Positions 13,992 through 56,011 of a stretch of DNA of 64,000 bases are shown in pieces (the stretch's first letter is position 1; each line of letters begins with the position of its first letter). Position numbers and translations under genes: made by a program. Below the pieces are notes generated by a model, which worked only from the letters and a program-made list of their open reading frames with translations, had not been told where the DNA came from and ran no database searches. The stretch spans positions 1 to 64,000 of IMG/VR virus record IMGVR_UViG_3300046542_000291. One strand, written 5' to 3'.

Positions 13992-15233
13992 TCATTTCTT
14001 TGGTACGGTTGCTTTCTTGTAGGCCTTTACGGCCGTCAAGCGAGCACGTCGGATAGCTTCACCCAACACCTTCCCTGTAACACCTGTAGCCACCACTGGG
14101 CCAACATCTACGGCACGCACGACATCAGCTGCATCCCGAAGGTATTGCGCCTGCGGATAGTCACGTTGTTCAAAGCCTGTGCGTCCCCGAGCATCCATTT
14201 CACACGCCGAAACGAATTCATCGAATCGATGTGGTCGTCGGTATACATCAAAGATCTTCAGCAATGCCAGCAGCTTCGATGGAGTAAGGTCAAGAGCACG
14301 GTGGCCATGGGTGTGGTAACGACCTACCTTCATGGCTAAGTCCTGGCAGTCAGATGGAACCTTGAAGCGTTTGCTCACAGCCTTAATCAACGGCTCGCCA
14401 CTTTCTTCATGCCCGATGTGTTGTGGCCATGTTTCAGGTGGGGTTAATGCTTTACCCAGATCATGCATCAAGCACGACCAACGCACCGTCAGTGGTTGCT
14501 TGTACAGAGCAGCTTGTTCTAACACAGCCAGCACGTGGATACCTGTATCGATCTCTGGGTGATGAGCTGCTGGTTGTGGGATACCGAACAAGGCATCGAC
14601 TTCCGGCAACAACACTTTCAAGGCACCACATTCACGTAGAACTTGGATAAAGACCTGGGGATGCTCTTCCATCAACGCTCGGGACATCTCTTTCCAACTA
14701 CGCTCTGCCGTCAATGCGGCCAGCTCACCTGACGCACTGAGTTCGCACATCAACGCCATTGTTTCAGGGGCAATGGTGAAACCTAAACCAGCGTAACGGG
14801 CAGCGAAGCGAGCAACACGCAGAACACGAACTGGGTCTTCCGCAAAGGCTGGTGAGACATGGCGCAGGATGCGTGCATCCAGATCCCGTTTGCCGCCGTA
14901 GGGATCAGTCAGGTTGAGCTGATCGTCTTCAGCCATGGCATTGATCGTCAAGTCACGACGAGCCAGGTCTTCTTCCAGCGTTACTTCAGGACTGGCATGG
15001 AAGGTGAACCCGCCGTAGCCAATACCTGTTTTACGTTCGGTGCGAGCCAGTGCATATTCATCCCCGGTTTCCGGATTGATGAACACTGGGAAATCGGAAC
15101 CCACTGGTCGATAGCCTTGAGCAACCATCTCCTCAGCGGTAGAGCCAACCACCACCCAGTCCACGTCGGTTACAGGGAAGCCCAGCAATCGATCGCGTAC
15201 GGCTCCACCGACTTTATAAACGGGTGTTTTCAT
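13992..15233 (-). CDS. cca: multifunctional CCA tRNA nucleotidyltransferase / HD phosphatase (413 aa)
   Basis: [43 protein letters not shown] and the HD domain (HPEIDTG, LMHDLGK); closely follows the Pseudomonas Cca pattern. Confidence 0.95.
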
Positions 15234-47827: not shown

Positions 47828-48922
47828 ATGAATACATTGAGTTGGCTGGAGAAGCAGGTCCCTTCTCTTGAAGATGGCCAACCCCTCCAAGAAGACGGTA
47901 CCCGTGAAGATCCGAGTAACCGTCCTGTCGTACCTGATTCCGCTGATGAAAGCGATGTAGGTGGTGATCGTTCACATGACGACAACCGTGAGCACCACAT
48001 GGGTGGTCGTGTTACAGACCCGGTTGAGGAAGTCGAGAACAACACGTTTGTCGATGACTACACCCCCGCCGATCACGTCAGAGAAGTAGAAGAAACCATT
48101 TCCATTGAAGGATTGGTCGAAGGTATCCGTAAGTTTTTCGGTATGCACAACCGAGGTAAAGACTACGTTGAGTTCGAACAAGGGAATAACCAAAACCTGG
48201 CGAACATGACCAAACAGATTGACAATACCTACGGCAACACTGAATGGTTGGGTAAGCAATCCCCCGTACAGGGCAAAGTCAAAGTTGAGGATATCTCTGG
48301 TTCGGTGAATATCGACAACCTTGCCGATAGCCTTACTCAGATTGCCAGCAGTGCCTTGCAGATCCAGAATGCCAAAACCGAAGCTGCCCGTAAGTTTGTA
48401 CAGTCGCTTAAACCTGGCCTCGATCTCATTGCTAAAGCTGGTAAGCCGACCGATGCAGCCTATGAAGCATTAAAGCCTCTTCTGGCTGAAGCAAAGCCAG
48501 CGTCTGAGCTTTACCGTGGTCCAAACAAAGCTGCTGCCTCCGATGGGAAGACGGTAGAAGAAGCAGATCCAATCGCCATCGCCGACATGCCTGCGATTGC
48601 TGGAGTGTTGTCGAAAGTCCTCAAGGACCTGGACAGTGCTAACGATGATCTACGCGAAGCTATCTATTCCACTTCGAAAGCGATGGAAATGGAATCCTTC
48701 ACCACGTACTTTGCCGAACGCCCTAATGGGAACCTGGGAACTCCAGCTGGTTCGAAATACAATGGCGATGCATGGACAGCCCTGGGCCAAGGTATTCGTA
48801 GAAAGCTTATGTCGTGCAACGTTCCACCGGTGATCGCGTCGTCTACCGCTTTTGACAAAGCATGCCGAGCTACTGCTATTTACCTGGAACGCTCCATTAA
48901 AGGCGGTAAGGTTGCTGAGTAA
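47828..48922 (+). CDS. putative internal head protein with acidic propeptide (364 aa)
   Basis: PSLE and ISIE match the S/A/G-X-E prohead protease cleavage motif of phiKZ-like phages; acidic N-terminal ~95 aa. Confidence 0.6.
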   Translation: MNTLSWLEKQVPSLEDGQPLQEDGTREDPSNRPVVPDSADESDVGGDRSHDDNREHHMGGRVTDPVEEVENNTFVDDYTPADHVREVEETISIEGLVEGIRKFFGMHNRGKDYVEFEQGNNQNLANMTKQIDNTYGNTEWLGKQSPVQGKVKVEDISGSVNIDNLADSLTQIASSALQIQNAKTEAARKFVQSLKPGLDLIAKAGKPTDAAYEALKPLLAEAKPASELYRGPNKAAASDGKTVEEADPIAIADMPAIAGVLSKVLKDLDSANDDLREAIYSTSKAMEMESFTTYFAERPNGNLGTPAGSKYNGDAWTALGQGIRRKLMSCNVPPVIASSTAFDKACRATAIYLERSIKGGKVAE

Positions 48923-49029
48923 GCAATAATATAGACCAAAGTTCGTACCTGGTCTAGTCAAAGTCGTGCGCCGGAGCCATCTCCTTTTCTTGATGGCTTC
49001 TAGAAGTGATCCTTCTGCGACTGTCACCT

Positions 49030-49059
49030 CATAACCGAGCCCTTTCGGGCTCGGTTATG
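49030..49059. terminator. hairpin terminator
   Basis: CATAACCGAGCCC-TTTC-GGGCTCGGTTATG perfect dyad. Confidence 0.8.
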
Positions 49060-49085
49060 TCTGCTTCAACTTAAAGGACATTTTG

Positions 49086-49097
49086 TGTAATAGTATA
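49086..49097 (+). promoter_or_regulatory. TGTAATAGTATA promoter-like motif, copy 1
   Basis: Identical 12-mer repeated at 49161 and 50538. Confidence 0.6.
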
Positions 49098-49147
49098 CGT
49101 GGATATTGTGCCCTCTTTGAGAAACAGTACCACCAGAGCCGAGAATT

Positions 49148-49172
49148 AAAATACTCTGCTTGTAATAGTATA
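49148..49172 (+). promoter_or_regulatory. AAAATAC-N6-TGTAATAGTATA promoter-like motif, copy 2
   Basis: Upstream of tRNA-Tyr; resembles the phiKZ middle AAanntTAC element. Confidence 0.6.
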
Positions 49173-49268
49173 CGGAAGCACTGTCGTAACGCCTAAGATT
49201 GAGTCCAGCAGCGCCTAGAGCGCGGCATAGAAAACTTTCTCTTAACGTTGCTATGGTGTTATCCTGTC

Positions 49269-49353
49269 GGGTGTGTTGGGGAGTGGCCAAACCCAGGAGA
49301 TTGTAAATCTCCCGTCGCTGACTTCGCAGGTTCGAATCCTGCTGCACCCACCA
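49269..49353 (+). tRNA. tRNA-Tyr(GTA)
   Basis: Class II cloverleaf, GGAGA-TTGTAAA-TCTCC, GCAGG-TTCGAAT-CCTGC, A73, encoded CCA. Confidence 0.95.
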
Positions 49354-49539
49354 ATTCCGGGAATGCTCTATTAGAGTGTGCCTAAAGAATCTCTTGAGAT
49401 ATACGCCCTTAACGGTACGCTCGACCTTGTCCTATGGATAACCTCGACTGCTATGAGAAGCGAAGAATGTGGTTGGTAGCGGCCCTCTCAAGTAAGATAG
49501 CTAGGTTAATGCCAGCTTAGCAAGTTACCGTGGTTTAAT

Positions 49540-49608
49540 GCCAGCGTAGTTCAATTGGTAGAACACCGGCTTAGCCGGAGGTTGTGGGTTCGATTCCCGC
49601 CGCAGGCT
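49540..49608 (+). ncRNA. tRNA-like element A with truncated anticodon arm
   Basis: GCCAGCG/CGCAGGC acceptor, GTTC/GAAC D arm, GTGGG-TTCGATT-CCCGC T arm; anticodon arm only 13 nt (CCGGC-TTA-GCCGG); no CCA. Confidence 0.8.
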
Positions 49609-49609
49609 G

Positions 49610-49719
49610 CTGATCAGAAGGCTAGCAATAGCAGAACTAAAACGAGGCGCCGGTACGCGCCTACCCAACTAACGAACGACCTGACGCGCAGGGTAATCAG
49701 TGGTTGGGGAACTGGTCAG
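49610..49719 (+). ncRNA. structured RNA, copy A
   Basis: Stems CTGATCA/TGGTCAG, GCTA/TAGC, GGCGC/GCGCC, CCCAAC/GTTGGG; linkers identical to the copy at 50201-50310. Confidence 0.8.
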
Positions 49720-49863
49720 GTAAAGAATACCCCTCTGTTGGTGGAGCGAGGCAGAGTTGGCGGCGTTAGTGATACGCAGCTGGGTTATTTGGTCTTAAGT
49801 GATCAACATCGCGGCACATTTTACCGGAGCAATGCTGGGACTAGTGCCTTACATTGTTTCATT

Positions 49864-49940
49864 GCGATCATAGCTCAGTTGGTTAGAGTACTTGCCTGTC
49901 ACGCAAGGGGTCGCGGGTTCGAGTCCCGCTGGTCGCGCCA
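49864..49940 (+). tRNA. tRNA-Asp(GTC)
   Basis: Canonical cloverleaf, CTTGC-CTGTCAC-GCAAG, G73, CCA. Confidence 0.97.
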
Positions 49941-49959
49941 TATTCACTGGAGATGTTTC

Positions 49960-50121
49960 ATGAAAGTCAAGATCCACCAACGCCCTCTTAAGGTCATGGG
50001 TCCAGCCGAATGTCGCTGCTGCGACCAACTCAGCTGGAAAGATTTGAAACTGGATAAGCAAGCATTGAAAGAAGCCGTTAACGATACAGCTTACGCTCTC
50101 GATAAACGGCGAGCAGCATAG
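49960..50121 (+). CDS. 53-aa peptide with CRCC (MKVKIHQRPL...)
   Basis: GGAGA SD; sits between tRNA-Asp and tRNA-like element B. Confidence 0.6.
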   Translation: MKVKIHQRPLKVMGPAECRCCDQLSWKDLKLDKQALKEAVNDTAYALDKRRAA

Positions 50122-50123
50122 AC

Positions 50124-50199
50124 GCCACCTTAGCTTAAATTGGTAAAGCGCCTCTACCGTAAGGTTTAGGAGATTGCAGGTTCGATTCCTGCGGTGGAT
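50124..50199 (+). ncRNA. tRNA-like element B with GNRA-capped anticodon arm
   Basis: GCTT/AAGC D arm, GCAGG-TTCGATT-CCTGC T arm, CCACC/GGTGG acceptor core; anticodon arm CCT-CT-ACC-GTAA-GGT-TT-AGG; no CCA. Confidence 0.75.
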
Positions 50200-50200
50200 G

Positions 50201-50310
50201 CCCGATAGAAGGTTCTTCGGAACAGAAGTAAAACACGGCGTCATTACACGCCGATCTAGTAAACGCGACCTAGCGATCGTAGGGTAATCAGTTACTAGAG
50301 AACTATCGGG
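50201..50310 (+). ncRNA. structured RNA, copy B
   Basis: Stems CCCGATA/TATCGGG, GTTC/GAAC (UUCG loop), GGCGT/ACGCC, TCTAGTAA/TTACTAGA; covaries with copy A. Confidence 0.8.
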
Positions 50311-50537
50311 GTACAGAGTACAGTCAGACGGGCGTATCGCAAATGCTGACTGGAACAACCTTCACTGCTTACGAGTCGGGGCAGTTCTAATCGAAAGATT
50401 GATGCAGCTGGTTAAGAGCCCAGTACTGACCACCAAATTCAAAGTTTCAAGCACCGCCTGGTCCAGAAGTTAGCCAGGGTAAAACGGTCATCCAGAGGAA
50501 GCCTGGTATAGCGATCCAAATGTAAATGTTGGTTCTA

Positions 50538-50549
50538 TGTAATAGTATA
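50538..50549 (+). promoter_or_regulatory. TGTAATAGTATA promoter-like motif, copy 3
   Basis: 20 nt upstream of tRNA-Asn. Confidence 0.6.
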
Positions 50550-50569
50550 GGACGAGCATTGCTCCCCAT

Positions 50570-50654
50570 TGGCAAGTACCCGAGTTGGTAGCAGGGGCCG
50601 GACTGTTAATCCGTTTGCGAAAGCACACCGCTGGTTCGAGTCCAGCCTTGCCAG
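50570..50654 (+). tRNA. tRNA-Asn(GTT) with long variable arm, no encoded CCA
   Basis: TGGCAAG/CTTGCCA acceptor, G73, loop CTGTTAA, variable arm TGC-GAAA-GCA, GCTGG-TTCGAGT-CCAGC. Confidence 0.8.
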
Positions 50655-50722
50655 CATTCCGTAAAAGAGTCCAATGGACTCTTTTATTCTGTCTATTAGT
50701 TCGAACCCAGGGAAGAACTTAC

Positions 50723-51289
50723 ATGTCGAAAGTTAGAACAAAAGATATCAACGGGTACATCGCGCTGTATTTACCTGACCATCCTTCAGCTAAAGAAAAC
50801 CCGAAGATGTTTGGCTGGGTGTATGAACACAGGTTAGTGGCAGAAAGTTTTTTGAATCGTCGTCTTTACGATGGTGAGGAAGTCCACCATCTGGACGAGA
50901 ATAAGAAGAATAACCACCCAGAGAATCTATTGGTACTCACGCAATCGCAACATGCGAAGTTGCATGCATGGATGAGGAGGATGGGTATTGATCCTAAGAC
51001 TTACCCAACACGTATCTGTAAAGCGTGTAAGAACGTACTATGGGTATCCCAGGAATGGTTCTGTTGCGATGCCTGTGCCAAAGTCGGTGCGCGTAAGGTA
51101 GAGCGTCCATCTAAAGAACAACTGACCATGGACATTACCGTATTGTCTTTAGTGAAAGTCGGACAGAAGTATGGAGTATCCGATAACAGTATCCGCAAGT
51201 GGTGTAAATTCTACGAAATTAATATCCAGCCAAAGTTTGCCCGCTATCGCGCAGGTGGCGGTGGTGAGGTAGCCATTCAACTACAATAA
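50723..51289 (+). CDS. HNH endonuclease with C-terminal Zn-finger/HTH (188 aa)
   Basis: YEHRLVAE...EVHHLDENKKNNHPENL; CxxC..CC..C; YGVSDNSIRKW helix-turn-helix. Confidence 0.88.
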   Translation: MSKVRTKDINGYIALYLPDHPSAKENPKMFGWVYEHRLVAESFLNRRLYDGEEVHHLDENKKNNHPENLLVLTQSQHAKLHAWMRRMGIDPKTYPTRICKACKNVLWVSQEWFCCDACAKVGARKVERPSKEQLTMDITVLSLVKVGQKYGVSDNSIRKWCKFYEINIQPKFARYRAGGGGEVAIQLQ

Positions 51290-51299
51290 AGAATTTATT

Positions 51300-51803
51300 A
51301 TGACTTACAAGCTTGAACTGATTGAACACAGTAATACCTACGAAAAAGGTAAGTTCCTGCGACTGATTGATTTACTTAGCGTCTACGAGAAGGATGGATT
51401 CATAAAGCTGATCCTTGCTGTAGAACTGGATAGTCTTGACCGCAAAGGTAAGTTGGAAACACCTTTCCATATCGTCAAGGCTTACACCGAGAGTGGCGCT
51501 TTGGTTGGGTATTCGTTTTACTATCCCAAAGAGAAGACCTGTGAGTTCTATGTACTGCCACACTGGCGGGGGAAAGGTATCGGTACGCTTCTGGTTAATG
51601 CCATGCGTGAGAACTGGTCAGGTACTTCGGTGCTCTGTGCTTACCGGGGCTTTGATGGATGGAAGAACTTCTTTGACCGTAACTTCATCCTGGAGATGGA
51701 CCCTTATGAAAATGGGGGTTCAGCAACCGAACGCAATGCGCGTAAGAAATCAGCTAAGTTGTCAATGTCTCGTCAAATGACTAAAGCTGGTATTACAGCG
51801 TAA
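51300..51803 (+). CDS. GNAT-family acetyltransferase (167 aa)
   Basis: Motif A FYVLPHWRGKGIGTLLV. Confidence 0.85.
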   Translation: MTYKLELIEHSNTYEKGKFLRLIDLLSVYEKDGFIKLILAVELDSLDRKGKLETPFHIVKAYTESGALVGYSFYYPKEKTCEFYVLPHWRGKGIGTLLVNAMRENWSGTSVLCAYRGFDGWKNFFDRNFILEMDPYENGGSATERNARKKSAKLSMSRQMTKAGITA

Positions 51804-51816
51804 AGAGGAACAACGC

Positions 51817-51939
51817 ATGGAACCGTACATGACCATCCTAGGGATGGGTTTCACAGAACACGAGCTGACGGTTTGGCTGGCTACCTTTGCAGCGTGCTGT
51901 ATGGTGGGTATGTTTGCAATGATTGCCTTTAACGACTAG
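51817..51939 (+). CDS. 40-aa single-TM peptide
   Basis: GAGGA SD; MEPYMTILGMGFTEHELTVWLATFAACCMVGMFAMIAFND. Confidence 0.65.
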   Translation: MEPYMTILGMGFTEHELTVWLATFAACCMVGMFAMIAFND

Positions 51940-51948
51940 GAAAAGAAT

Positions 51949-52260
51949 ATGTCATGTGAAGATCTTCTGTTTCATGGTAAGCGTACAACTCAAGGCGTAA
52001 AGATCCTAGAGTATCCAACCTACACCATCGCTAATCTAACGGGTAACCGTTGGAACGTTCTGTGTCGTATGTACGGTGACTCGGGTTATCAACCCAGTGA
52101 AGCGGCCTGTAAGGAGTGGGTGCGTCGCCACATCAATCATTACGTACGTTTGGAAGAGCTTACCAAACTGCAAGACAAACTGGACCGGATAGAAAAACAC
52201 ATCAAAGGCCTCGGTTATAACTCCATTGAAGAATTTGCGGTTGAGCACACAGGTGACTAG
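51949..52260 (+). CDS. hypothetical protein (103 aa)
   Basis: AGGA SD. Confidence 0.7.
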   Translation: MSCEDLLFHGKRTTQGVKILEYPTYTIANLTGNRWNVLCRMYGDSGYQPSEAACKEWVRRHINHYVRLEELTKLQDKLDRIEKHIKGLGYNSIEEFAVEHTGD

Positions 52261-52263
52261 ACC

Positions 52264-52386
52264 ATGGAAATAGTAATGACCCTGTTTGGCGCACCCATTA
52301 CTGGCGAGCAGTTAGTTTTCGGTATAGCTGCTCTTTGTATAGCCACCGCATTTATCTGCGTGGGTTTAATCGTATCTGGAGATTGA
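52264..52386 (+). CDS. 40-aa single-TM peptide
   Basis: MEIVMTLFGAPITGEQLVFGIAALCIATAFICVGLIVSGD; packed between neighbouring genes. Confidence 0.6.
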   Translation: MEIVMTLFGAPITGEQLVFGIAALCIATAFICVGLIVSGD

Positions 52387-52387
52387 T

Positions 52388-52642
52388 ATGGTACAGGCAT
52401 GTTGCGACAGCGTAGGTAAGTACATCAGTGAAGAAGGTGTCCTGGATACCGAGAAGGTACGGGAACGGTTTGGGCTGGACGCGGTAATCGAAGTACGTGA
52501 GGATAAAGAATCTGAACTGGCCAAATGGATATTCACCAGGGAAGCACGCTACCCCTCAGAGACATTTGTGATTGTCGGGGAAGTGGAATCGAAACTCTGT
52601 GTTTGCCCATGCCACCGAGTTGGTTTGATGGTGATGCATTAA
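52388..52642 (+). CDS. hypothetical protein (84 aa)
   Basis: GGAGA SD; C-terminal CVCPCH; followed by a terminator. Confidence 0.65.
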   Translation: MVQACCDSVGKYISEEGVLDTEKVRERFGLDAVIEVREDKESELAKWIFTREARYPSETFVIVGEVESKLCVCPCHRVGLMVMH

Positions 52643-52645
52643 TAG

Positions 52646-52668
52646 GGAGCCTTAGGGCTCCTTTTATG
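52646..52668 (+). terminator. hairpin terminator
   Basis: GGAGCC-TTAG-GGCTCC-TTTT. Confidence 0.7.
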
Positions 52669-52710
52669 CCCTATCGTTATGTTATTAAATTTACCGTTTA
52701 CGAGGCAACT

Positions 52711-53433
52711 ATGATCGAGCAAATGCTGAATCCAGGTGTATTGCTCCCCGAGGATACCGGCGACGTGATTTTTCTTTACGACCCCGTTACGAATACGGAT
52801 CTCATCGGCGGCCCTGCGGTGAGTACGTTATCAGGGGGCGCAATCGCCGACTCAACTATCCTGATCAATAACCAGCCCACACTTAAGTTCCCAACTACAA
52901 ACGCAAAGCATGTCATCACGTGGCCAACGGATCTAAACTTGGCTATCGGCAACTGGACATTAGAATGGTCTTTTATCAATGACAGCACACCGGCGGCGTA
53001 CGGCAACGATCTTGTAATGTATTCCAGGTCAGGTGGTTCGGGTGTAGGTGTTTATATGCGCTTCGGCAACACGGGTTTTGGTAATCGTTATTTCATGTCC
53101 GATCCGAGGGGTGCGGTTGACCAAACTTTAACACAACCTCTACCGATTGCTAACTCATCACTGACCGGGGTCACCACTAACATAGCCTTGGTGAGTATTC
53201 AAGGTGTTATCCGAATCTACGTCAACGGCGTAGCTCAAATGATGGCCCTAGGTGTAAGCACTAATACTTACGACAGACCAAGCATGATAGCTCAGGGAAT
53301 GGATAAGATTTATTCCATTGGTCTGGGGTGGGCTGTTTCTGCTGTCCCCGCGGTACCAGGTCACCGCGGACGAATTAGGTTGAGTAACTTCGCCAGATAC
53401 AGACGGAGCTATACGCCAGGACCGTTGGTGTAG
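52711..53433 (+). CDS. ConA/LamG-like lectin-fold protein, probably virion-associated (240 aa)
   Basis: GAGG SD; GNWTLEW, NIALV..QG.IRIYVNGV, IRLSNFARY pattern of phage LamG-like modules. Confidence 0.65.
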   Translation: MIEQMLNPGVLLPEDTGDVIFLYDPVTNTDLIGGPAVSTLSGGAIADSTILINNQPTLKFPTTNAKHVITWPTDLNLAIGNWTLEWSFINDSTPAAYGNDLVMYSRSGGSGVGVYMRFGNTGFGNRYFMSDPRGAVDQTLTQPLPIANSSLTGVTTNIALVSIQGVIRIYVNGVAQMMALGVSTNTYDRPSMIAQGMDKIYSIGLGWAVSAVPAVPGHRGRIRLSNFARYRRSYTPGPLV

Positions 53434-53436
53434 AAT

Positions 53437-53463
53437 AAAAATACTGGTCAGGTAATACTATAC
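53437..53463 (+). promoter_or_regulatory. AAAAATAC-N6-GGTAATACTATA promoter-like motif
   Basis: Variant of the 49148 motif, heading a non-coding RNA block. Confidence 0.55.
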
Positions 53464-53703
53464 AGGAGACTGCACTCAAACCTGTCTCTGTTGGAAGGTG
53501 CCTAAACTCAACCTAGGCAACGGGCTGCACAGCCAATAGAGTAGAAGCCCTACGACCACGTCAAGCTGTCTATAGTGAAGCCGTGATCAGGGAAGCCCAC
53601 CGCCGTACCCTTAGTATATCGAATCCGGGATAGACCCTGGTGAAGACCCAATAATCACCCGAAGGGCAAAGAAGGTGGACGGTACTACAGCGTATCTGTA
53701 GTA
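53463..53703 (+). ncRNA. candidate structured RNA
   Basis: No plus-strand ORF; stems CTCTGTTGG/CCAATAGAG, CCACC/GGTGG, GGTGA/TCACC, TACTACAG/CTGTAGTA; seven GAAG tetramers. Confidence 0.5.
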
Positions 53704-53777
53704 GCTCTGATCGTCTAACGGTAAGACAGTTGCCGCCCAGGCAACGTACATGGGTTCGACTCCCGAGATGAGCACCA
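53704..53777 (+). ncRNA. degenerate tRNA-like element C (nominal CCC anticodon, G33)
   Basis: GTCT/AGAC D arm, GTTGC-CGCCCAG-GCAAC, TTCGACT T loop, only 4 acceptor pairs, ACCA end. Confidence 0.7.
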
Positions 53778-53815
53778 TTTATAGATTCAATTGCCCCCGG
53801 AGGCATTTGCGTCGA

Positions 53816-53907
53816 ATTTGAAAGATATAGTGGGTATCACTGGCCTGACCGTGGTTGGTCCTAATGCTGGTTTCCCTCTTAATGAGAGGTAGGTATCTCT
53901 TTCAAAT
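53816..53907 (+). ncRNA. candidate four-way-junction RNA
   Basis: Closing stem ATTTGAAAGA/TCTTTCAAAT-like with inner hairpins AGTG/CACT, GACC/GGTC, CCTCT/AGAGG. Confidence 0.45.
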
Positions 53908-53984
53908 ACAGTCGCTCTTCTTACCCAAGATCGGCAACCTACGAGAATTAAGTGCACTGCTTATAAAGAGTGCCAGAGTTTGTG

Positions 53985-54070
53985 AGCGGGGTCGTCTAGC
54001 GGCCTAGGACACCGGTGGCCACCATAGCACCAAGCCGGAAACACAGGTTCGATTCCTGTCCCCAATCCCA
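53985..54070 (+). ncRNA. tRNA-Glu-like element D with expanded anticodon loop
   Basis: Glu-type D arm GTCTAGCGGCCTAGGAC, CCGG-[19 nt]-CCGG, ACAGG-TTCGATT-CCTGT, GGGG/CCCC acceptor core, CCA. Confidence 0.75.
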
Positions 54071-54077
54071 AAGTTTA

Positions 54078-54153
54078 GGATCAGTAGCTCAATTGGCAGA
54101 GCAACCGATTCCAAATCGGTAGGTTCCAAGTTCGACTCCTGGCTGGTCCGCCA
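54078..54153 (+). tRNA. tRNA-Trp(CCA)
   Basis: Canonical cloverleaf, ACCGA-TTCCAAA-TCGGT, G73, CCA. Confidence 0.95.
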
Positions 54154-54177
54154 GTTTTAAGAATCTGCTGCAGCAGA

Positions 54178-54292
54178 TAGTGTGAGACATTCGGTCTGCG
54201 ATAGTGCCAGCGCCTCGTAAGCGTGAGAAGACCCTAGGCCTCAGGATGAGGGAAAAGACCCGTAGCCGACGGAGAGCATCACACTAACACCA
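54178..54292 (+). ncRNA. candidate multibranch RNA ending ACACCA
   Basis: 8-bp closing stem TAGTGTGA/TCACACTA, inner hairpins AGAC/GTCT, CCTC/GAGG, CCGT/ACGG. Confidence 0.45.
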
Positions 54293-54310
54293 TCCCCATT
54301 GGAGTATCCC

Positions 54311-54496
54311 ATGACGTCAGTAGTTACCATCAAAGCACACCCGGTTGAAGGCAAGCAGGTCCAAGTGACCGTGAGTGACCCAACCATGAACCAGGAAGTC
54401 CTGGAACAGTTCTATCTGCAGAACGGTGAAAGCGCAGAACGCGTTGTCTACGAAGACCGTGTGGTATCCGTTCGTGAAGTTTCCAAACCTGCGTAA
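54311..54496 (+). CDS. hypothetical protein (61 aa)
   Basis: GGAG SD, strong phage codon bias. Confidence 0.7.
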   Translation: MTSVVTIKAHPVEGKQVQVTVSDPTMNQEVLEQFYLQNGESAERVVYEDRVVSVREVSKPA

Positions 54497-54517
54497 TGCA
54501 CGCACCAGAGAGTAAAG

Positions 54518-55192
54518 ATGTTCGTCGATATCAGTGCCTATTTGATCGCCACTCCTCTTCCAGTCTCCGATGAAAATCCGGTAGCGCTGGAACTCCTCGG
54601 CTCGGAAGCCTTGGTAAACTGCAAGGACGTGATCTGTCAACTGGAAGACGGCTCCATACAACTCTCCGCTCCCACGTTGGGGGCATCTAGCAAAAGTACA
54701 CACCGCACTCGGTGTGAATGGAAAGAGCCAGCTTACTGGGCTCTCGCTAGTGCCGCACATCACTGGTCTCGCCAAGAGATGGCTGTTACTCAGGTCAACT
54801 CAGCTCAGAAAGTAGTGATTGCACAAACACATGTGAAAGGCGCCACTACTCCGCCCCTGAAAGTCTTCTGGAATAAAGGGAAGATTACAGCTGGATTCCG
54901 TTCGAGTTTCGTTGATCCCACGATCAACAACTTTACCCTACTCGAAGACGTGCCTCTCGGCATACTCTTCAAAGTAAGCCTGCATGTAACAGCGGCGGGT
55001 TCTGTTTCCGTCAATGTCCTTTGCGAAGGGCGTAAATCGGTGTGTCCGGTGTTGAAATTGGACAGCTCGTGGAAAGACCAGACCTTCCAGTTCCATGGGG
55101 GTGTTTACAACCAGATCGATTACAGCGATACGACACCGCCAGAAGATGGTTCTATCTGCATAATCACCGAGTTGTCAACAACGCATTACTAA
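54518..55192 (+). CDS. polysaccharide lyase family 7 (alginate lyase, 224 aa)
   Basis: RTRCEWKE (RxExRE), IAQTHV (QIH), FHGGVYNQ (YFKAGxYxQ) motifs. Confidence 0.88.
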   Translation: MFVDISAYLIATPLPVSDENPVALELLGSEALVNCKDVICQLEDGSIQLSAPTLGASSKSTHRTRCEWKEPAYWALASAAHHWSRQEMAVTQVNSAQKVVIAQTHVKGATTPPLKVFWNKGKITAGFRSSFVDPTINNFTLLEDVPLGILFKVSLHVTAAGSVSVNVLCEGRKSVCPVLKLDSSWKDQTFQFHGGVYNQIDYSDTTPPEDGSICIITELSTTHY

Positions 55193-55199
55193 ACGTGAT

Positions 55200-55223
55200 C
55201 GGAACCTTCGGGTTCCGTTTATG
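55200..55223 (+). terminator. hairpin terminator
   Basis: CGGAACC-TTCG-GGTTCCG-TTTATG. Confidence 0.75.
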
Positions 55224-55246
55224 CCCACCAACAAAGAGTAACTAAA

Positions 55247-55825
55247 ATGAAAGAGCCTAAGACGTTCGAGCTAATCGATCATTACGTGAACGGCATGAAA
55301 GAATATATCGCCACCAATCGCGAATACTGGCGAAGATCGACCGGTGATGATCAAGCAACCTTCCTGAAAGACTTCGCTACCATCGGCGTAACGGTTCCTC
55401 GACAATCCGGAGCAACCTTCTGGGTACATACTCGTGCCATTGCCGATAAGGACTCAATGGTTATTGTCTTCGGGCAACGCGATAAAGACGCGGCTTACAA
55501 TAACTTTACCCACGCGGGGGAATACATTCCAATCCACTGCGGTAGGGAAGTTACAGCGGAAGAATGGCTACGTCGTAATGAGCAACGTGGACTTGGGGCT
55601 AAGTTCCTAGGTCGCTTCTTCACCACCGATGACGTGTTCCAGGAAATGAATAGTTGGTCCGAAGGGTTACAGGGGCACTCTCCATGGATTCGCGGACTGG
55701 GTATTAACAAAACGATTTACCTCATGGGGGCAGGTGCTATCATGAGTAAGGTGAAACGTAACAAGCTGTATAACTGGCTTGCTAACTTCACTGACCCCGA
55801 CAGCGTTATCATCACGGTGAACTAA
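55247..55825 (+). CDS. hypothetical protein (192 aa)
   Basis: Plus-strand ORF with phage codon usage. Confidence 0.7.
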   Translation: MKEPKTFELIDHYVNGMKEYIATNREYWRRSTGDDQATFLKDFATIGVTVPRQSGATFWVHTRAIADKDSMVIVFGQRDKDAAYNNFTHAGEYIPIHCGREVTAEEWLRRNEQRGLGAKFLGRFFTTDDVFQEMNSWSEGLQGHSPWIRGLGINKTIYLMGAGAIMSKVKRNKLYNWLANFTDPDSVIITVN

Positions 55826-56011
55826 ATGAGAGTCAAAGCTACAATCGAAGCCGTTGCAAAGAACATCGAATTTCACAAGATCGATCTGGACAAAGACAAC
55901 CGCATGGTGCGCCTGGGCGTAGGTCGACATGACGGTAAGTGGTTTGTTCGTGCCGACCTCTGGTTTGCGGGCTTCCGTCTCAACCAACGCGACTATACGT
56001 TGTTCGCGTAA
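55826..56011 (+). CDS. hypothetical protein (61 aa)
   Basis: Abuts the upstream stop. Confidence 0.65.
   Translation: MRVKATIEAVAKNIEFHKIDLDKDNRMVRLGVGRHDGKWFVRADLWFAGFRLNQRDYTLFA

What the first reader, a model, noticed from the sequence alone, without database searches (positions are those of the whole stretch)
50570..50654. tRNA-Asn(GUU) on a class II (long variable arm) scaffold and lacking CCA
Seen: GTT anticodon, U1-A72 and G73 (Asn-type identity elements) combined with a Tyr-like 3-bp D stem and a TGC-GAAA-GCA variable arm. Established: bacterial tRNA-Asn is normally class I. It would need CCA addition, and the phage carries its own Cca. It may be an anticodon-switched tRNA-Tyr/Ser body or a nuclease-evading tRNA.
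Basis: partly seen in the sequence, partly recalled or inferred. Interest (0 to 1): 0.6.

Follow-up and report, generated by a model that had tools for sequence, protein, structure and literature searches.

The report
Long-armed phage tRNA-Asn riding with HNH
This is a real phage tRNA for asparagine with an extra stem-loop that asparagine tRNAs normally lack; the shape is common in phages, and here the gene travels with a homing endonuclease that in phiKZ has split an ordinary tRNA-Asn gene.

Summary
Window 50570-50654 (+) is a well-scoring tRNA with a GUU anticodon, U1-A72, G73, a 3-bp D stem with G13.A22, a 15-nt variable region (U, UGC-GAAA-GCA, CACC) and no encoded CCA. It is not a one-off. 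Full-length homologues exist in Psa21, phiKZ and about 20 phiKZ-like phages, a 93-kb P. fluorescens phage and IMG/VR contigs. All five helices, including the variable stem, covary. More broadly, about 10% of sampled viral loci with a tRNA(GUU) carry a long arm. A second subfamily occurs in over 500 T5-like and other enterobacterial phage records. The arms are Tyr-type in geometry but mostly GNRA-capped, and the Asn identity marks are kept. I read it as a working tRNA-Asn and the phage's only one. It has its own promoter-like motif and terminator, and CCA is added after transcription; the phage does encode a Cca-type enzyme. The tRNA and the HNH endonuclease gene downstream form a discrete two-gene module. 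In phiKZ and phiHQ this module sits inside the anticodon loop of a class I tRNA-Asn gene. In OMKO1 the long-arm gene has replaced the 3' half of the class I gene. What the arm does remains inferred.

The parts
50570..50654 (+). tRNA-Asn(GUU) with a long variable arm, from position 1 to discriminator G73; CCA is not encoded
   Evidence: ARAGORN; Rfam 50.4 bits; covariation in all five helices; only tRNA(GUU) among the 7 tRNA-model matches in the 310-kb genome
50615..50629 (+). Variable region: U44, a 3-bp stem UGC/GCA capped by a GAAA tetraloop (50619-50622), and the 4-nt linker CACC
   Evidence: Sequence. The stem covaries at all 3 pairs, while the GAAA loop (one GCAA) and the 4-nt linker, mostly CAYC, are conserved across 16 homologues. 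This geometry is typical of 94 viral long-arm Asn tRNAs
50605..50607 (+). Anticodon GTT within the 7-nt loop CTGTTAA
   Evidence: invariant in alignments A2 and A3
50538..50549 (+). Promoter-like motif TGTAATAGTATA, ending 20 nt before the tRNA 5' end
   Evidence: 5 matches in the window against 0.06 expected. Two of them precede tRNA-Tyr. The exact motif also lies upstream of the Psa21 homologue. Its function as a promoter is inferred
50661..50687 (+). Intrinsic-terminator-like hairpin (12-pair stem followed by a T run), 6 nt after the tRNA
   Evidence: equivalent hairpins follow the homologues in Psa21, phiKZ and OMKO1
50723..51289 (+). HNH_3 endonuclease gene (188 aa), the second gene of the tRNA-HNH module
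   Evidence: Pfam PF13392, 43.1 bits. About 64% amino-acid identity to Psa21 PSA21_414 and phiKZ PHIKZ296. In every one of those records it lies next to the long-arm tRNA
50441..50521 (+). Conserved non-coding element at the left border of the module
   Evidence: 92.7% identical to phage D6, where it directly abuts a class I tRNA-Asn; a weaker copy is present in Psa21
13992..15233 (-). Phage Cca-type nucleotidyltransferase (413 aa), a candidate for adding CCA to this tRNA
   Evidence: PF01743 59.4 bits, PF12627 55 bits, PF01966 35.4 bits

Best explanation
It is a working elongator tRNA-Asn from a phage-specific long-arm lineage. Inferred steps: it is transcribed as a short unit running from the TGTAATAGTATA motif to the terminator at 50661-50687. 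It is cut by RNase P, trimmed at the 3' end and given CCA by the phage or host Cca. It is then charged by the host's asparagine route through GUU plus G73. In Pseudomonas that route is the non-discriminating AspRS followed by GatCAB, which reads U1-A72. The tRNA reads AAC and AAU. Shown here: the gene is one half of a two-gene module, tRNA-Asn plus an HNH endonuclease, shared by otherwise unrelated regions of Pseudomonas jumbo phages. In phiKZ and phiHQ the module lies inside the anticodon loop of a class I tRNA-Asn gene. In OMKO1-type phages the long-arm gene has overwritten the 3' half of the class I gene. My reading is that the long-arm tRNA is the spare copy carried by a homing-endonuclease cassette that targets ordinary tRNA-Asn genes.
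For: It is a tRNA under selection: Rfam score and covariation in all helices. The Asn marks are kept across 117 long-arm tRNAs: G73 in 111 and U1-A72 in 84, proportions like those of the class I phage Asn tRNAs. The identity rules come from PMC9976931. P. aeruginosa AspS is recorded as a non-discriminating enzyme. It is the only tRNA(GUU) in this genome and in OMKO1. D6 has two class I Asn genes at the matching site. A terminator and a promoter-like motif flank the gene. A Cca-type enzyme is present. Module evidence: by tblastx, window and phiKZ share only tRNA-Asp, this tRNA and the HNH gene across the 8-kb region compared. HNH homologues above 60% identity occur only in the 16 records that also hold the tRNA nearby. 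phiKZ has a 5' half (nt 1-37, 97% identical) and a 3' half (nt 36-76, 93%) of a class I Asn gene flanking a roughly 770-bp insert that holds the tRNA and the HNH gene; phiHQ is the same. The insert gives no group I intron signal. [quoted passage not shown]
Against: There is no RNA evidence for this phage: no RNA run holds the sequence. The phiKZ papers do not single out this tRNA. Charging was not tested. The enlarged D loop could affect GatCAB, for which U20a is a known antideterminant. The window copy has a C27.U43 mismatch and lacks CCA. The window has neither half of a class I gene beside the module, so insertion into a tRNA gene is shown only in relatives. Across IMG/VR most long-arm Asn genes have no adjacent HNH gene. 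Endonuclease activity and its target are inferred.
Confidence: 0.7

Rival explanations
1. The arm is a DNA-level immunity mark. The 10-nt insertion between the anticodon stem and the T stem destroys the recognition site of homing endonucleases that cut tRNA-Asn genes. Alleles with the arm therefore survive, and the variable region is the only place where a tRNA tolerates such an insertion. This adds to the best explanation rather than replacing it.
For: The tRNA and the HNH gene are linked in three phage groups, and the target gene is split in phiKZ and phiHQ. OMKO1 looks like the product of conversion of the paralogous class I gene. SegB recognises 27 bp, including the T-arm motif, in a tRNA-Asn gene. 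Long arms are enriched in Asn (about 10%) over other class I isotypes (2.8%). HNH-type ORFs flank long-arm Asn genes somewhat more often than class I ones: up to 15 family matches (8+5+2, which may overlap) among 133 ORFs against 4 (2+2) among 126.
Against: The enrichment is weak, with p between 0.016 and 0.17 depending on how far the family hits overlap. It is also confounded by phage type. Most long-arm genes have no endonuclease gene nearby. phiKZ keeps an intact class I copy beside the HNH gene. No cleavage data exist. The idea does not explain why the loop is GNRA.
Confidence: 0.2
2. The arm protects the RNA from a host tRNA-targeting nuclease, or lets a phage factor tell it apart from host tRNA-Asn.
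For: Phage tRNAs that resist host anticodon-arm nucleases are documented, for example T5 tRNA-Lys against PARIS AriB. The phage tRNA sets here are rich in GUN anticodons (Tyr, Asp, Asn, and His in relatives). The arm and its GNRA cap are strongly conserved.
Against: I found no nuclease directed at tRNA-Asn in the papers read. Known escapes work through changes in the anticodon stem-loop, not through an extra arm. Class I and long-arm alleles swap freely between close relatives.
Confidence: 0.12
3. It is a mischarging tRNA. The class II body attracts TyrRS or SerRS, so that Asn codons are read as Tyr or Ser.
For: The D stem and arm geometry are Tyr-like. SerRS ignores the anticodon and uses the long arm plus G73. 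A minority of long-arm GUU tRNAs elsewhere have G1-C72, Ser-like D arms and 5-7 bp arms, for example in L019 and L060.
Against: This tRNA has G73, not the A73 needed by TyrRS and LeuRS. It has U1-A72, not the G1-C72 conserved in bacterial Ser and Tyr tRNAs. Its anticodon has U36, not A36. Its arm has a 3-bp stem and 4 unpaired nt on the 3' side, unlike Ser arms. It is the sole tRNA-Asn of several viable phages.
Confidence: 0.04
4. It is a decaying or non-decoding tRNA-like gene. Several such genes sit in the same cluster.
For: The same cluster holds three tRNA-like genes with abnormal anticodon arms. The window copy has lost one C of CCA and has a C.U mismatch at the top of the anticodon stem.
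Against: The 7-nt anticodon loop is canonical and invariant. All helices are maintained by compensatory changes across distant phages. CCA is absent from 56% of long-arm and 42% of class I phage Asn genes.
Confidence: 0.04

Closest known systems
phiKZ 'tRNA-Asn' at 269557-269645 (AF399011) and its copies in phiKZ-like phages and Psa21
   Same: A full-length homologue, 85-96% identical, with the same five-arm architecture, the GAAA-capped 3-bp variable stem, a 4-nt CAYC linker, U1-A72 and G73. An HNH gene lies directly downstream, 64% identical at the protein level.
   Different: The window copy lacks an encoded CCA, has C27.U43, and has no class I tRNA-Asn half beside it. Database records name these genes only 'tRNA-Asn'; I found no text describing the long arm or the split gene.
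Bacterial class II tRNAs, above all tRNA-Tyr
   Same: A long variable arm with a short stem, 1 nt on the 5' side and 3-4 unpaired nt on the 3' side, plus a 3-bp D stem with a non-Watson-Crick 13-22 pair.
   Different: The anticodon is GUU, the discriminator is G73 and the first pair is U1-A72, instead of GUA, A73 and G1-C72. The arm loop is GNRA in 61% of long-arm Asn tRNAs against 5% of phage Tyr tRNAs.
Canonical bacterial or phage class I tRNA-Asn (e.g. the two copies in D6, phiKZ 271740-271817, T5 tRNAN)
   Same: The anticodon loop, G73 and U1-A72 are the same. The anticodon arm is nearly identical to that of D6 copy 1 and the T arm is similar. It occupies the same genomic position in related phages.
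   Different: The variable region is 15 nt instead of 5, and the D stem and D loop are of the class II type.
T4 SegB, a free-standing homing endonuclease in a phage tRNA cluster (PMC2330249)
   Same: An endonuclease gene sits among phage tRNA genes. SegB's preferred target is a tRNA-Asn gene of relatives that lack the endonuclease, and the gene is present in some close phages and absent in others.
   Different: SegB is GIY-YIG, not HNH, and carries no replacement tRNA-Asn. Here the module brings a structurally different tRNA-Asn and, in phiKZ, sits inside the target gene.
allo-tRNAs and other V-arm tRNAs with non-Ser anticodons (PMC5389517)
   Same: A long variable arm on a tRNA whose anticodon belongs to a class I amino acid.
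   Different: allo-tRNAs have 8/4 or 9/3 acceptor/T branches, Sec-like D arms and serine identity. This tRNA is 7/5 and carries Asn identity marks.

Membership tests
tRNA (Rfam RF00005) | Score above the gathering threshold over the full model, with a cloverleaf, a 7-nt anticodon loop and the T-loop motif | tested here: met
   50.4 bits against 29, model positions 1-71; ARAGORN call; five-arm minimum-energy fold
tRNA (Rfam RF00005) | Helices maintained by compensatory change in homologues | tested here: met
   19 of 23 pairs change on both sides, 96.4% of cells pair, 0 of 500 shuffles reach the observed values
Bacterial tRNA-Asn identity | Anticodon G34 U35 U36 and discriminator G73 | tested here: met
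   rule from PMC9976931; G73 in 111 of 117 long-arm relatives
Bacterial tRNA-Asn identity | U1-A72, required by GatCAB in hosts that lack AsnRS | tested here: met
   T at 50570 pairs with A at 50653; rule; U1-A72 in 84 of 117 relatives
Bacterial tRNA-Asn identity | Class I body with a 4-5 nt variable loop | tested here: not met
   15-nt variable region containing a hairpin
Bacterial tRNA-Asn identity | Charged with Asn, directly or through Asp | not testable with these tools
   Needs an aminoacylation assay
Class II tRNA scaffold | Variable region of more than 10 nt that forms a stem-loop | tested here: met
   15 nt with a 3-bp stem and a tetraloop; the stem covaries
Class II tRNA scaffold | 3-bp D stem with a non-Watson-Crick 13-22 pair | tested here: met
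   C10-G25, C11-G24, C12-G23 and G13.A22; comparison with other tRNA classes
tRNA-Tyr or tRNA-Leu identity | Discriminator A73 (for Tyr also the GUA anticodon and, in bacteria, G1-C72) | tested here: not met
   G73, GUU and U1-A72; rules
tRNA-Ser identity | G1-C72 and G2-C71, and a long arm of Ser geometry (stem of 5 bp or more, about 1 unpaired nt on the 3' side) | tested here: not met
   U1-A72; 3-bp stem with 4 unpaired nt on the 3' side. Phage Ser arms most often have 5-6 bp and 1 nt. G73 and G2-C71 are present
allo-tRNA | 8/4 or 9/3 acceptor/T-stem configuration | tested here: not met
   7-bp acceptor stem and 5-bp T stem; definition
Group I intron in a tRNA anticodon loop | Match to the group I intron model between the two tRNA halves | tested here: not met
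   No intron family at E up to 10 in phiKZ L003:2880-3880, nor at E up to 1 in window 48000-56000
Free-standing homing-endonuclease cassette | Encodes an endonuclease of a homing family | tested here: met
   PF13392 HNH_3, 43.1 bits
Free-standing homing-endonuclease cassette | Present in some close relatives and absent in others, with unrelated flanks between distant carriers | tested here: met
   D6 lacks it at the matching site, and phiKZ shares only the module. HNH is present in 16 records and absent from the OMKO1-type phages
Free-standing homing-endonuclease cassette | Sits in or beside its target site | tested here: inconclusive
   In phiKZ and phiHQ the module splits a class I tRNA-Asn gene. 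In the window no target remnant is left, and the actual cut site is unknown
Free-standing homing-endonuclease cassette | Site-specific cleavage and preferential inheritance in co-infection | not testable with these tools
   Needs enzyme assays and phage crosses

The most novel reading that the evidence does not exclude
Long variable arms on phage tRNA-Asn genes are scars of conflict with homing endonucleases that target tRNA-Asn genes. An insertion in the one place a tRNA tolerates it makes the gene uncuttable. Endonuclease cassettes carry such an immune spare tRNA, so they can destroy the ordinary gene without cost. A selfish DNA element would thus have created a structural class of tRNA, found in about a tenth of the sampled phage loci that carry a tRNA-Asn gene, that cellular genomes lack.
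Probability: 0.2. Interest if true: 0.8.

Novelty: new variant of a known kind. Interest (0 to 1): 0.55.

Why it matters
Textbooks give bacteria long-arm tRNAs only for Leu, Ser and Tyr, plus Sec. Here a fourth kind, tRNA-Asn with a Tyr-type GNRA-capped arm, turns out to be common in phages, including model phages such as phiKZ and its relatives and T5-like phages. It is rare in cellular genomes outside tRNA arrays. It sits in databases under a plain 'tRNA-Asn' label. This bears on how synthetases and GatCAB tolerate a foreign tRNA body and on annotation. The tRNA-plus-HNH module splits a class I tRNA-Asn gene in phiKZ and has overwritten it in the therapy phage OMKO1. That gives a concrete, testable case of a homing endonuclease that carries a replacement for the gene it disrupts.

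Tried and rejected
1. Recent duplicate of the phage's own tRNA-Tyr (49269-49353): rejected. Its D arm, variable arm and acceptor stem are all different.
2. Group I intron: no Rfam signal.
3. allo-tRNA: rejected, the branch is 7/5.
4. Expression in this phage: only two DNA runs hold the sequence, the likely source being a rhizosphere metagenome, so no reads were laid.
5. Literature: ten searches and eleven papers read gave no description of a long-arm tRNA-Asn or of the split phiKZ gene. Subscription and older T5 literature is not in the library, so prior description cannot be excluded.
6. PARIS as a tRNA-Asn nuclease: the paper reports tRNA-Lys only.
7. General link between long-arm Asn genes and HNH genes: at most 15 family matches among 133 flanking ORFs against 4 among 126, p 0.016-0.17, and confounded by phage type. 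Inconclusive.
8. Class I half-gene remnants next to other long-arm Asn genes: a few candidates (L023, L070, L140, L116), no general pattern.
9. A synthetase of the Asp/Asn/Lys family (PF00152) in the phage: none found.

Full report
**The object.** The window is the first 64 kb of a 310,396-bp phage genome with direct terminal repeats. It is related to the Pseudomonas syringae jumbo phages Psa21 and D6. The only runs that hold it are two DNA runs, and the likely source is a rhizosphere metagenome. ARAGORN calls tRNA-Asn(gtt) at 50570-50655. Rfam's tRNA model scores 50.4 bits against a gathering score of 29.

Read directly from the sequence:
- The acceptor stem gives U1-A72.
- G73 is followed by CAU rather than CCA.
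- The D stem has three G-C pairs plus G13.A22.
- The anticodon loop is CUGUUAA, on a stem of four pairs plus C27.U43.
- The variable region is 15 nt: U, UGC-GAAA-GCA, CACC.
- The T arm is standard.

**It is conserved, not an accident.** Full-length homologues of the same architecture occur in Psa21 (96.5% identity), phiKZ, about 20 phiKZ-like phages (85-86%) and the 93-kb P. fluorescens phage Y1-MI (78%). All of them are annotated simply as tRNA-Asn. A specific pattern found three further IMG/VR contigs. One is an AT-rich 110-kb contig whose copy has a completely different acceptor stem but the same arm.

On 16 diverse members, 96.4% of cells pair and 19 of 23 pairs change on both sides. No shuffle or slid register comes close. 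The variable stem covaries at all three pairs. The tetraloop, GAAA in nearly all members, and the 4-nt linker, mostly CAYC, are conserved. All close relatives encode GCCA, so the window copy has simply lost one C.

**The type is common in phages.**
ARAGORN called a tRNA(gtt) of 81 nt or more in about 107 cases.
- A scan that allowed both short and long spacings returned 119 loci. Twelve of them carried the long form: 10%, 95% interval 5-17%.
- A second subfamily, with G1-C72, is present at 80% coverage or more in 521 deposited phage genomes. These are mostly T5-like Salmonella and Escherichia phages and T4-like Klebsiella phages. T5 itself has a 78-nt class I gene at that place.
- In bacterial and archaeal genomes only 15 of the first 120 pattern hits were long tRNA(gtt) calls. 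Three of these were archaeal intron-containing tRNAs. Most of the rest lay in 8-kb stretches holding 10-36 tRNAs, that is, tRNA arrays of the mobile-element type.
- Long forms of other class I isotypes exist in viral loci (Thr-UGU, Met, Lys, His, Cys) but are rarer. They made up 2.8% of class I isotype tRNAs in loci with an ordinary Asn gene and 7.8% in loci with a long-arm Asn gene.

**What kind of arm.** In 94 viral long-arm Asn tRNAs the arm has one unpaired nt on the 5' side, a 3-4 bp stem and 3-4 unpaired nt on the 3' side (77%). That is the geometry of phage tRNA-Tyr, where 71% have 3 nt on the 3' side. It is not the geometry of Ser (stems most often 5-6 bp, 1 nt) or Leu (1-2 nt). Unlike Tyr arms, the loop is GNRA in 61% of cases against 5%. 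About a third of long-arm Asn tRNAs have G13.A22, as this one does, and 13-22 is a standard pair in 44% against 75% of class I Asn tRNAs.

**Identity.** Published rules (PMC9976931) are:
- Asn: the anticodon plus G73.
- GatCAB: U1-A72.
- Tyr and Leu: A73.
- Bacterial Ser: G1-C72 and G2-C71 plus the long arm.

This tRNA has the Asn and GatCAB marks and lacks the Tyr and Leu marks. It also lacks the G1-C72 pair and the arm geometry of bacterial tRNA-Ser. Among 117 long-arm tRNAs, 111 have G73 and 84 have U1-A72, much like the class I phage Asn genes.

It is the only tRNA(GUU) in this genome. D6 has two class I Asn genes at the matching site. OMKO1-type phages have the long-arm gene as their only tRNA-Asn. 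The phage has no synthetase of the Asp/Asn/Lys family. P. aeruginosa AspS is recorded as non-discriminating. I therefore infer charging by the host route; that P. syringae uses the same route is also an inference. Nothing here tests charging.

**Expression signals.** A motif TGTAATAGTATA occurs five times in the window against 0.06 expected. One copy ends 20 nt before the tRNA, two precede tRNA-Tyr, and the motif recurs upstream of the Psa21 homologue. A hairpin with a 12-pair stem and a T run follows the tRNA. CCA is not encoded in 56% of long-arm and 42% of class I phage Asn genes, so its absence is ordinary. phiKZ tRNAs as a group are expressed, have mapped transcription start sites and co-sediment with ribosomal subunits. 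This tRNA is not singled out in those papers.

**The unexpected part: a tRNA-HNH module.** The next gene, 50723-51289, is an HNH_3 endonuclease. By tblastx, window and phiKZ share only tRNA-Asp, this tRNA and this endonuclease (64% identity) across the 8-kb region compared. Homologues above 60% identity exist in only 16 records, and those are exactly the records that also hold the long-arm tRNA 90-170 bp away.

In phiKZ the module is flanked by the two halves of a class I tRNA-Asn gene:
- Nucleotides 1-37 (97% identical to the intact copy) lie 9 nt before the long-arm gene.
- Nucleotides 36-76 (93% identical, with a mutated T loop) lie just after the HNH gene.

phiHQ has the same layout. The roughly 770-bp insert gives no group I intron signal.

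In OMKO1, the class I gene next to tRNA-Asp keeps nucleotides 1-37. It then continues with the same 8-nt spacer and the long-arm gene, and ends in the original terminator. OMKO1 has no HNH gene and no other class I copy. Psa21 keeps a class I type 5' half. The window keeps neither half, perhaps through a deletion between the repeated acceptor strands.

There is a precedent for an endonuclease aimed at a phage tRNA-Asn gene. [quoted passage not shown]

**Reading.** I take the gene to be a working tRNA-Asn that serves as the spare carried by a homing-type cassette. What the arm does is open:
- It may protect the gene from the endonuclease. This is my preferred speculative reading.
- It may protect the RNA from host nucleases, as anticodon-arm changes do for T5 tRNA-Lys.
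- It may be a tolerated inheritance from a Tyr-like body.

A general link between long-arm Asn genes and HNH genes is weak: at most 15 family matches among 133 flanking ORFs against 4 among 126, p 0.016-0.17, and confounded by phage type.

**Limits.** The frequency estimates come from capped scans with one T-loop pattern. ARAGORN calls were not curated one by one. The literature check was limited to the held library.

Noticed in passing
window 49540-49608 (+): A tRNA-like gene (Rfam 59.5 bits) whose anticodon stem is closed by a 3-nt loop (CCGGC-TTA-GCCGG), with one acceptor mismatch. Its 5' half resembles the tRNA-Pro(UGG) of D6 and Psa21, so it may be a tRNA-Pro that lost 4 nt of its loop. 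ARAGORN does not call it.
   Followed up: partly
window 50125-50198 (+); L002:3805-3887 (D6, annotated tRNA-OTHER); L001:3634-3711 (Psa21): A conserved tRNA-like RNA with normal D and T arms but an extended anticodon arm; in the window its tip is a GTAA loop. Eight pairs keep pairing through double changes among the three phages. Function unknown. T5 also has annotated 'tRNA-like stable RNAs' in its tRNA region.
   Followed up: partly
window 53985-54067 (+): A weak tRNA match (30.6 bits) with a tRNA-Glu-like D arm and about 19 nt where the 7-nt anticodon loop should be, directly before tRNA-Trp.
   Followed up: no
window 49620-49730 and 50205-50320, plus 50441-50521; L002:3880-4085; L001:3710-3910: A repeated non-coding element of about 100-200 nt. 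It has a hairpin around GGCGNC...GCGCC followed by CGACCTGRCGCGCAGGGTAATCAGT. Each copy follows a tRNA-like gene, and the element is conserved in D6 and Psa21. There is no Rfam match at E up to 1.
   Followed up: partly
window 20192, 49086, 49161, 50538, 56026: The motif TGTAATAGTATA occurs five times against 0.06 expected. Three copies lie just upstream of tRNA genes. It is a candidate promoter of this phage group.
   Followed up: partly
L003:2955-2991 and L003:3764-3804 (phiKZ); PV029745 11925-11958 and 12706-12741 (phiHQ): phiKZ-type phages carry a class I tRNA-Asn gene split in its anticodon loop by the long-arm tRNA plus HNH insert. The halves are not annotated in the records seen.
   Followed up: yes
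L010:794-880 (-) and many IMG/VR loci (list): Long variable arms, often GNRA-capped, also occur on phage tRNAs with His, Thr(UGU), Met, Lys, Cys, Trp, Ile(GAU), Gln, Glu and Arg anticodons. Some arrays (L117, L051, L119) hold several. The His example keeps G-1 and C73.
   Followed up: partly
L019:4717-4803 (-), L060:6795-6883 (+), L082:5533-5622 (-): A minority of long-arm GUU tRNAs have G1-C72, G73, a Ser-like D arm (GGCCGAGTGG...GGC) and arms with stems of about 4-7 bp and only 1 unpaired nt on the 3' side. On paper these could be serine acceptors that read Asn codons.
   Followed up: no
L023:6268-6542, L070 and L140 (offsets): Further class I tRNA-like halves, separated by 30-200 nt, lie next to long-arm Asn genes in unrelated viral contigs. 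They may be other split or insertion-bearing tRNA genes.
   Followed up: no
L242, L305, L333, L250 and other bacterial contigs: Long-arm tRNA(GUU) genes in bacterial assemblies (a Thermoguttaceae MAG, Verrucosispora, Mycobacterium and others) sit in dense arrays of 18-36 tRNAs within 8 kb. This suggests that these arrays share ancestry with phage tRNA clusters.
   Followed up: no
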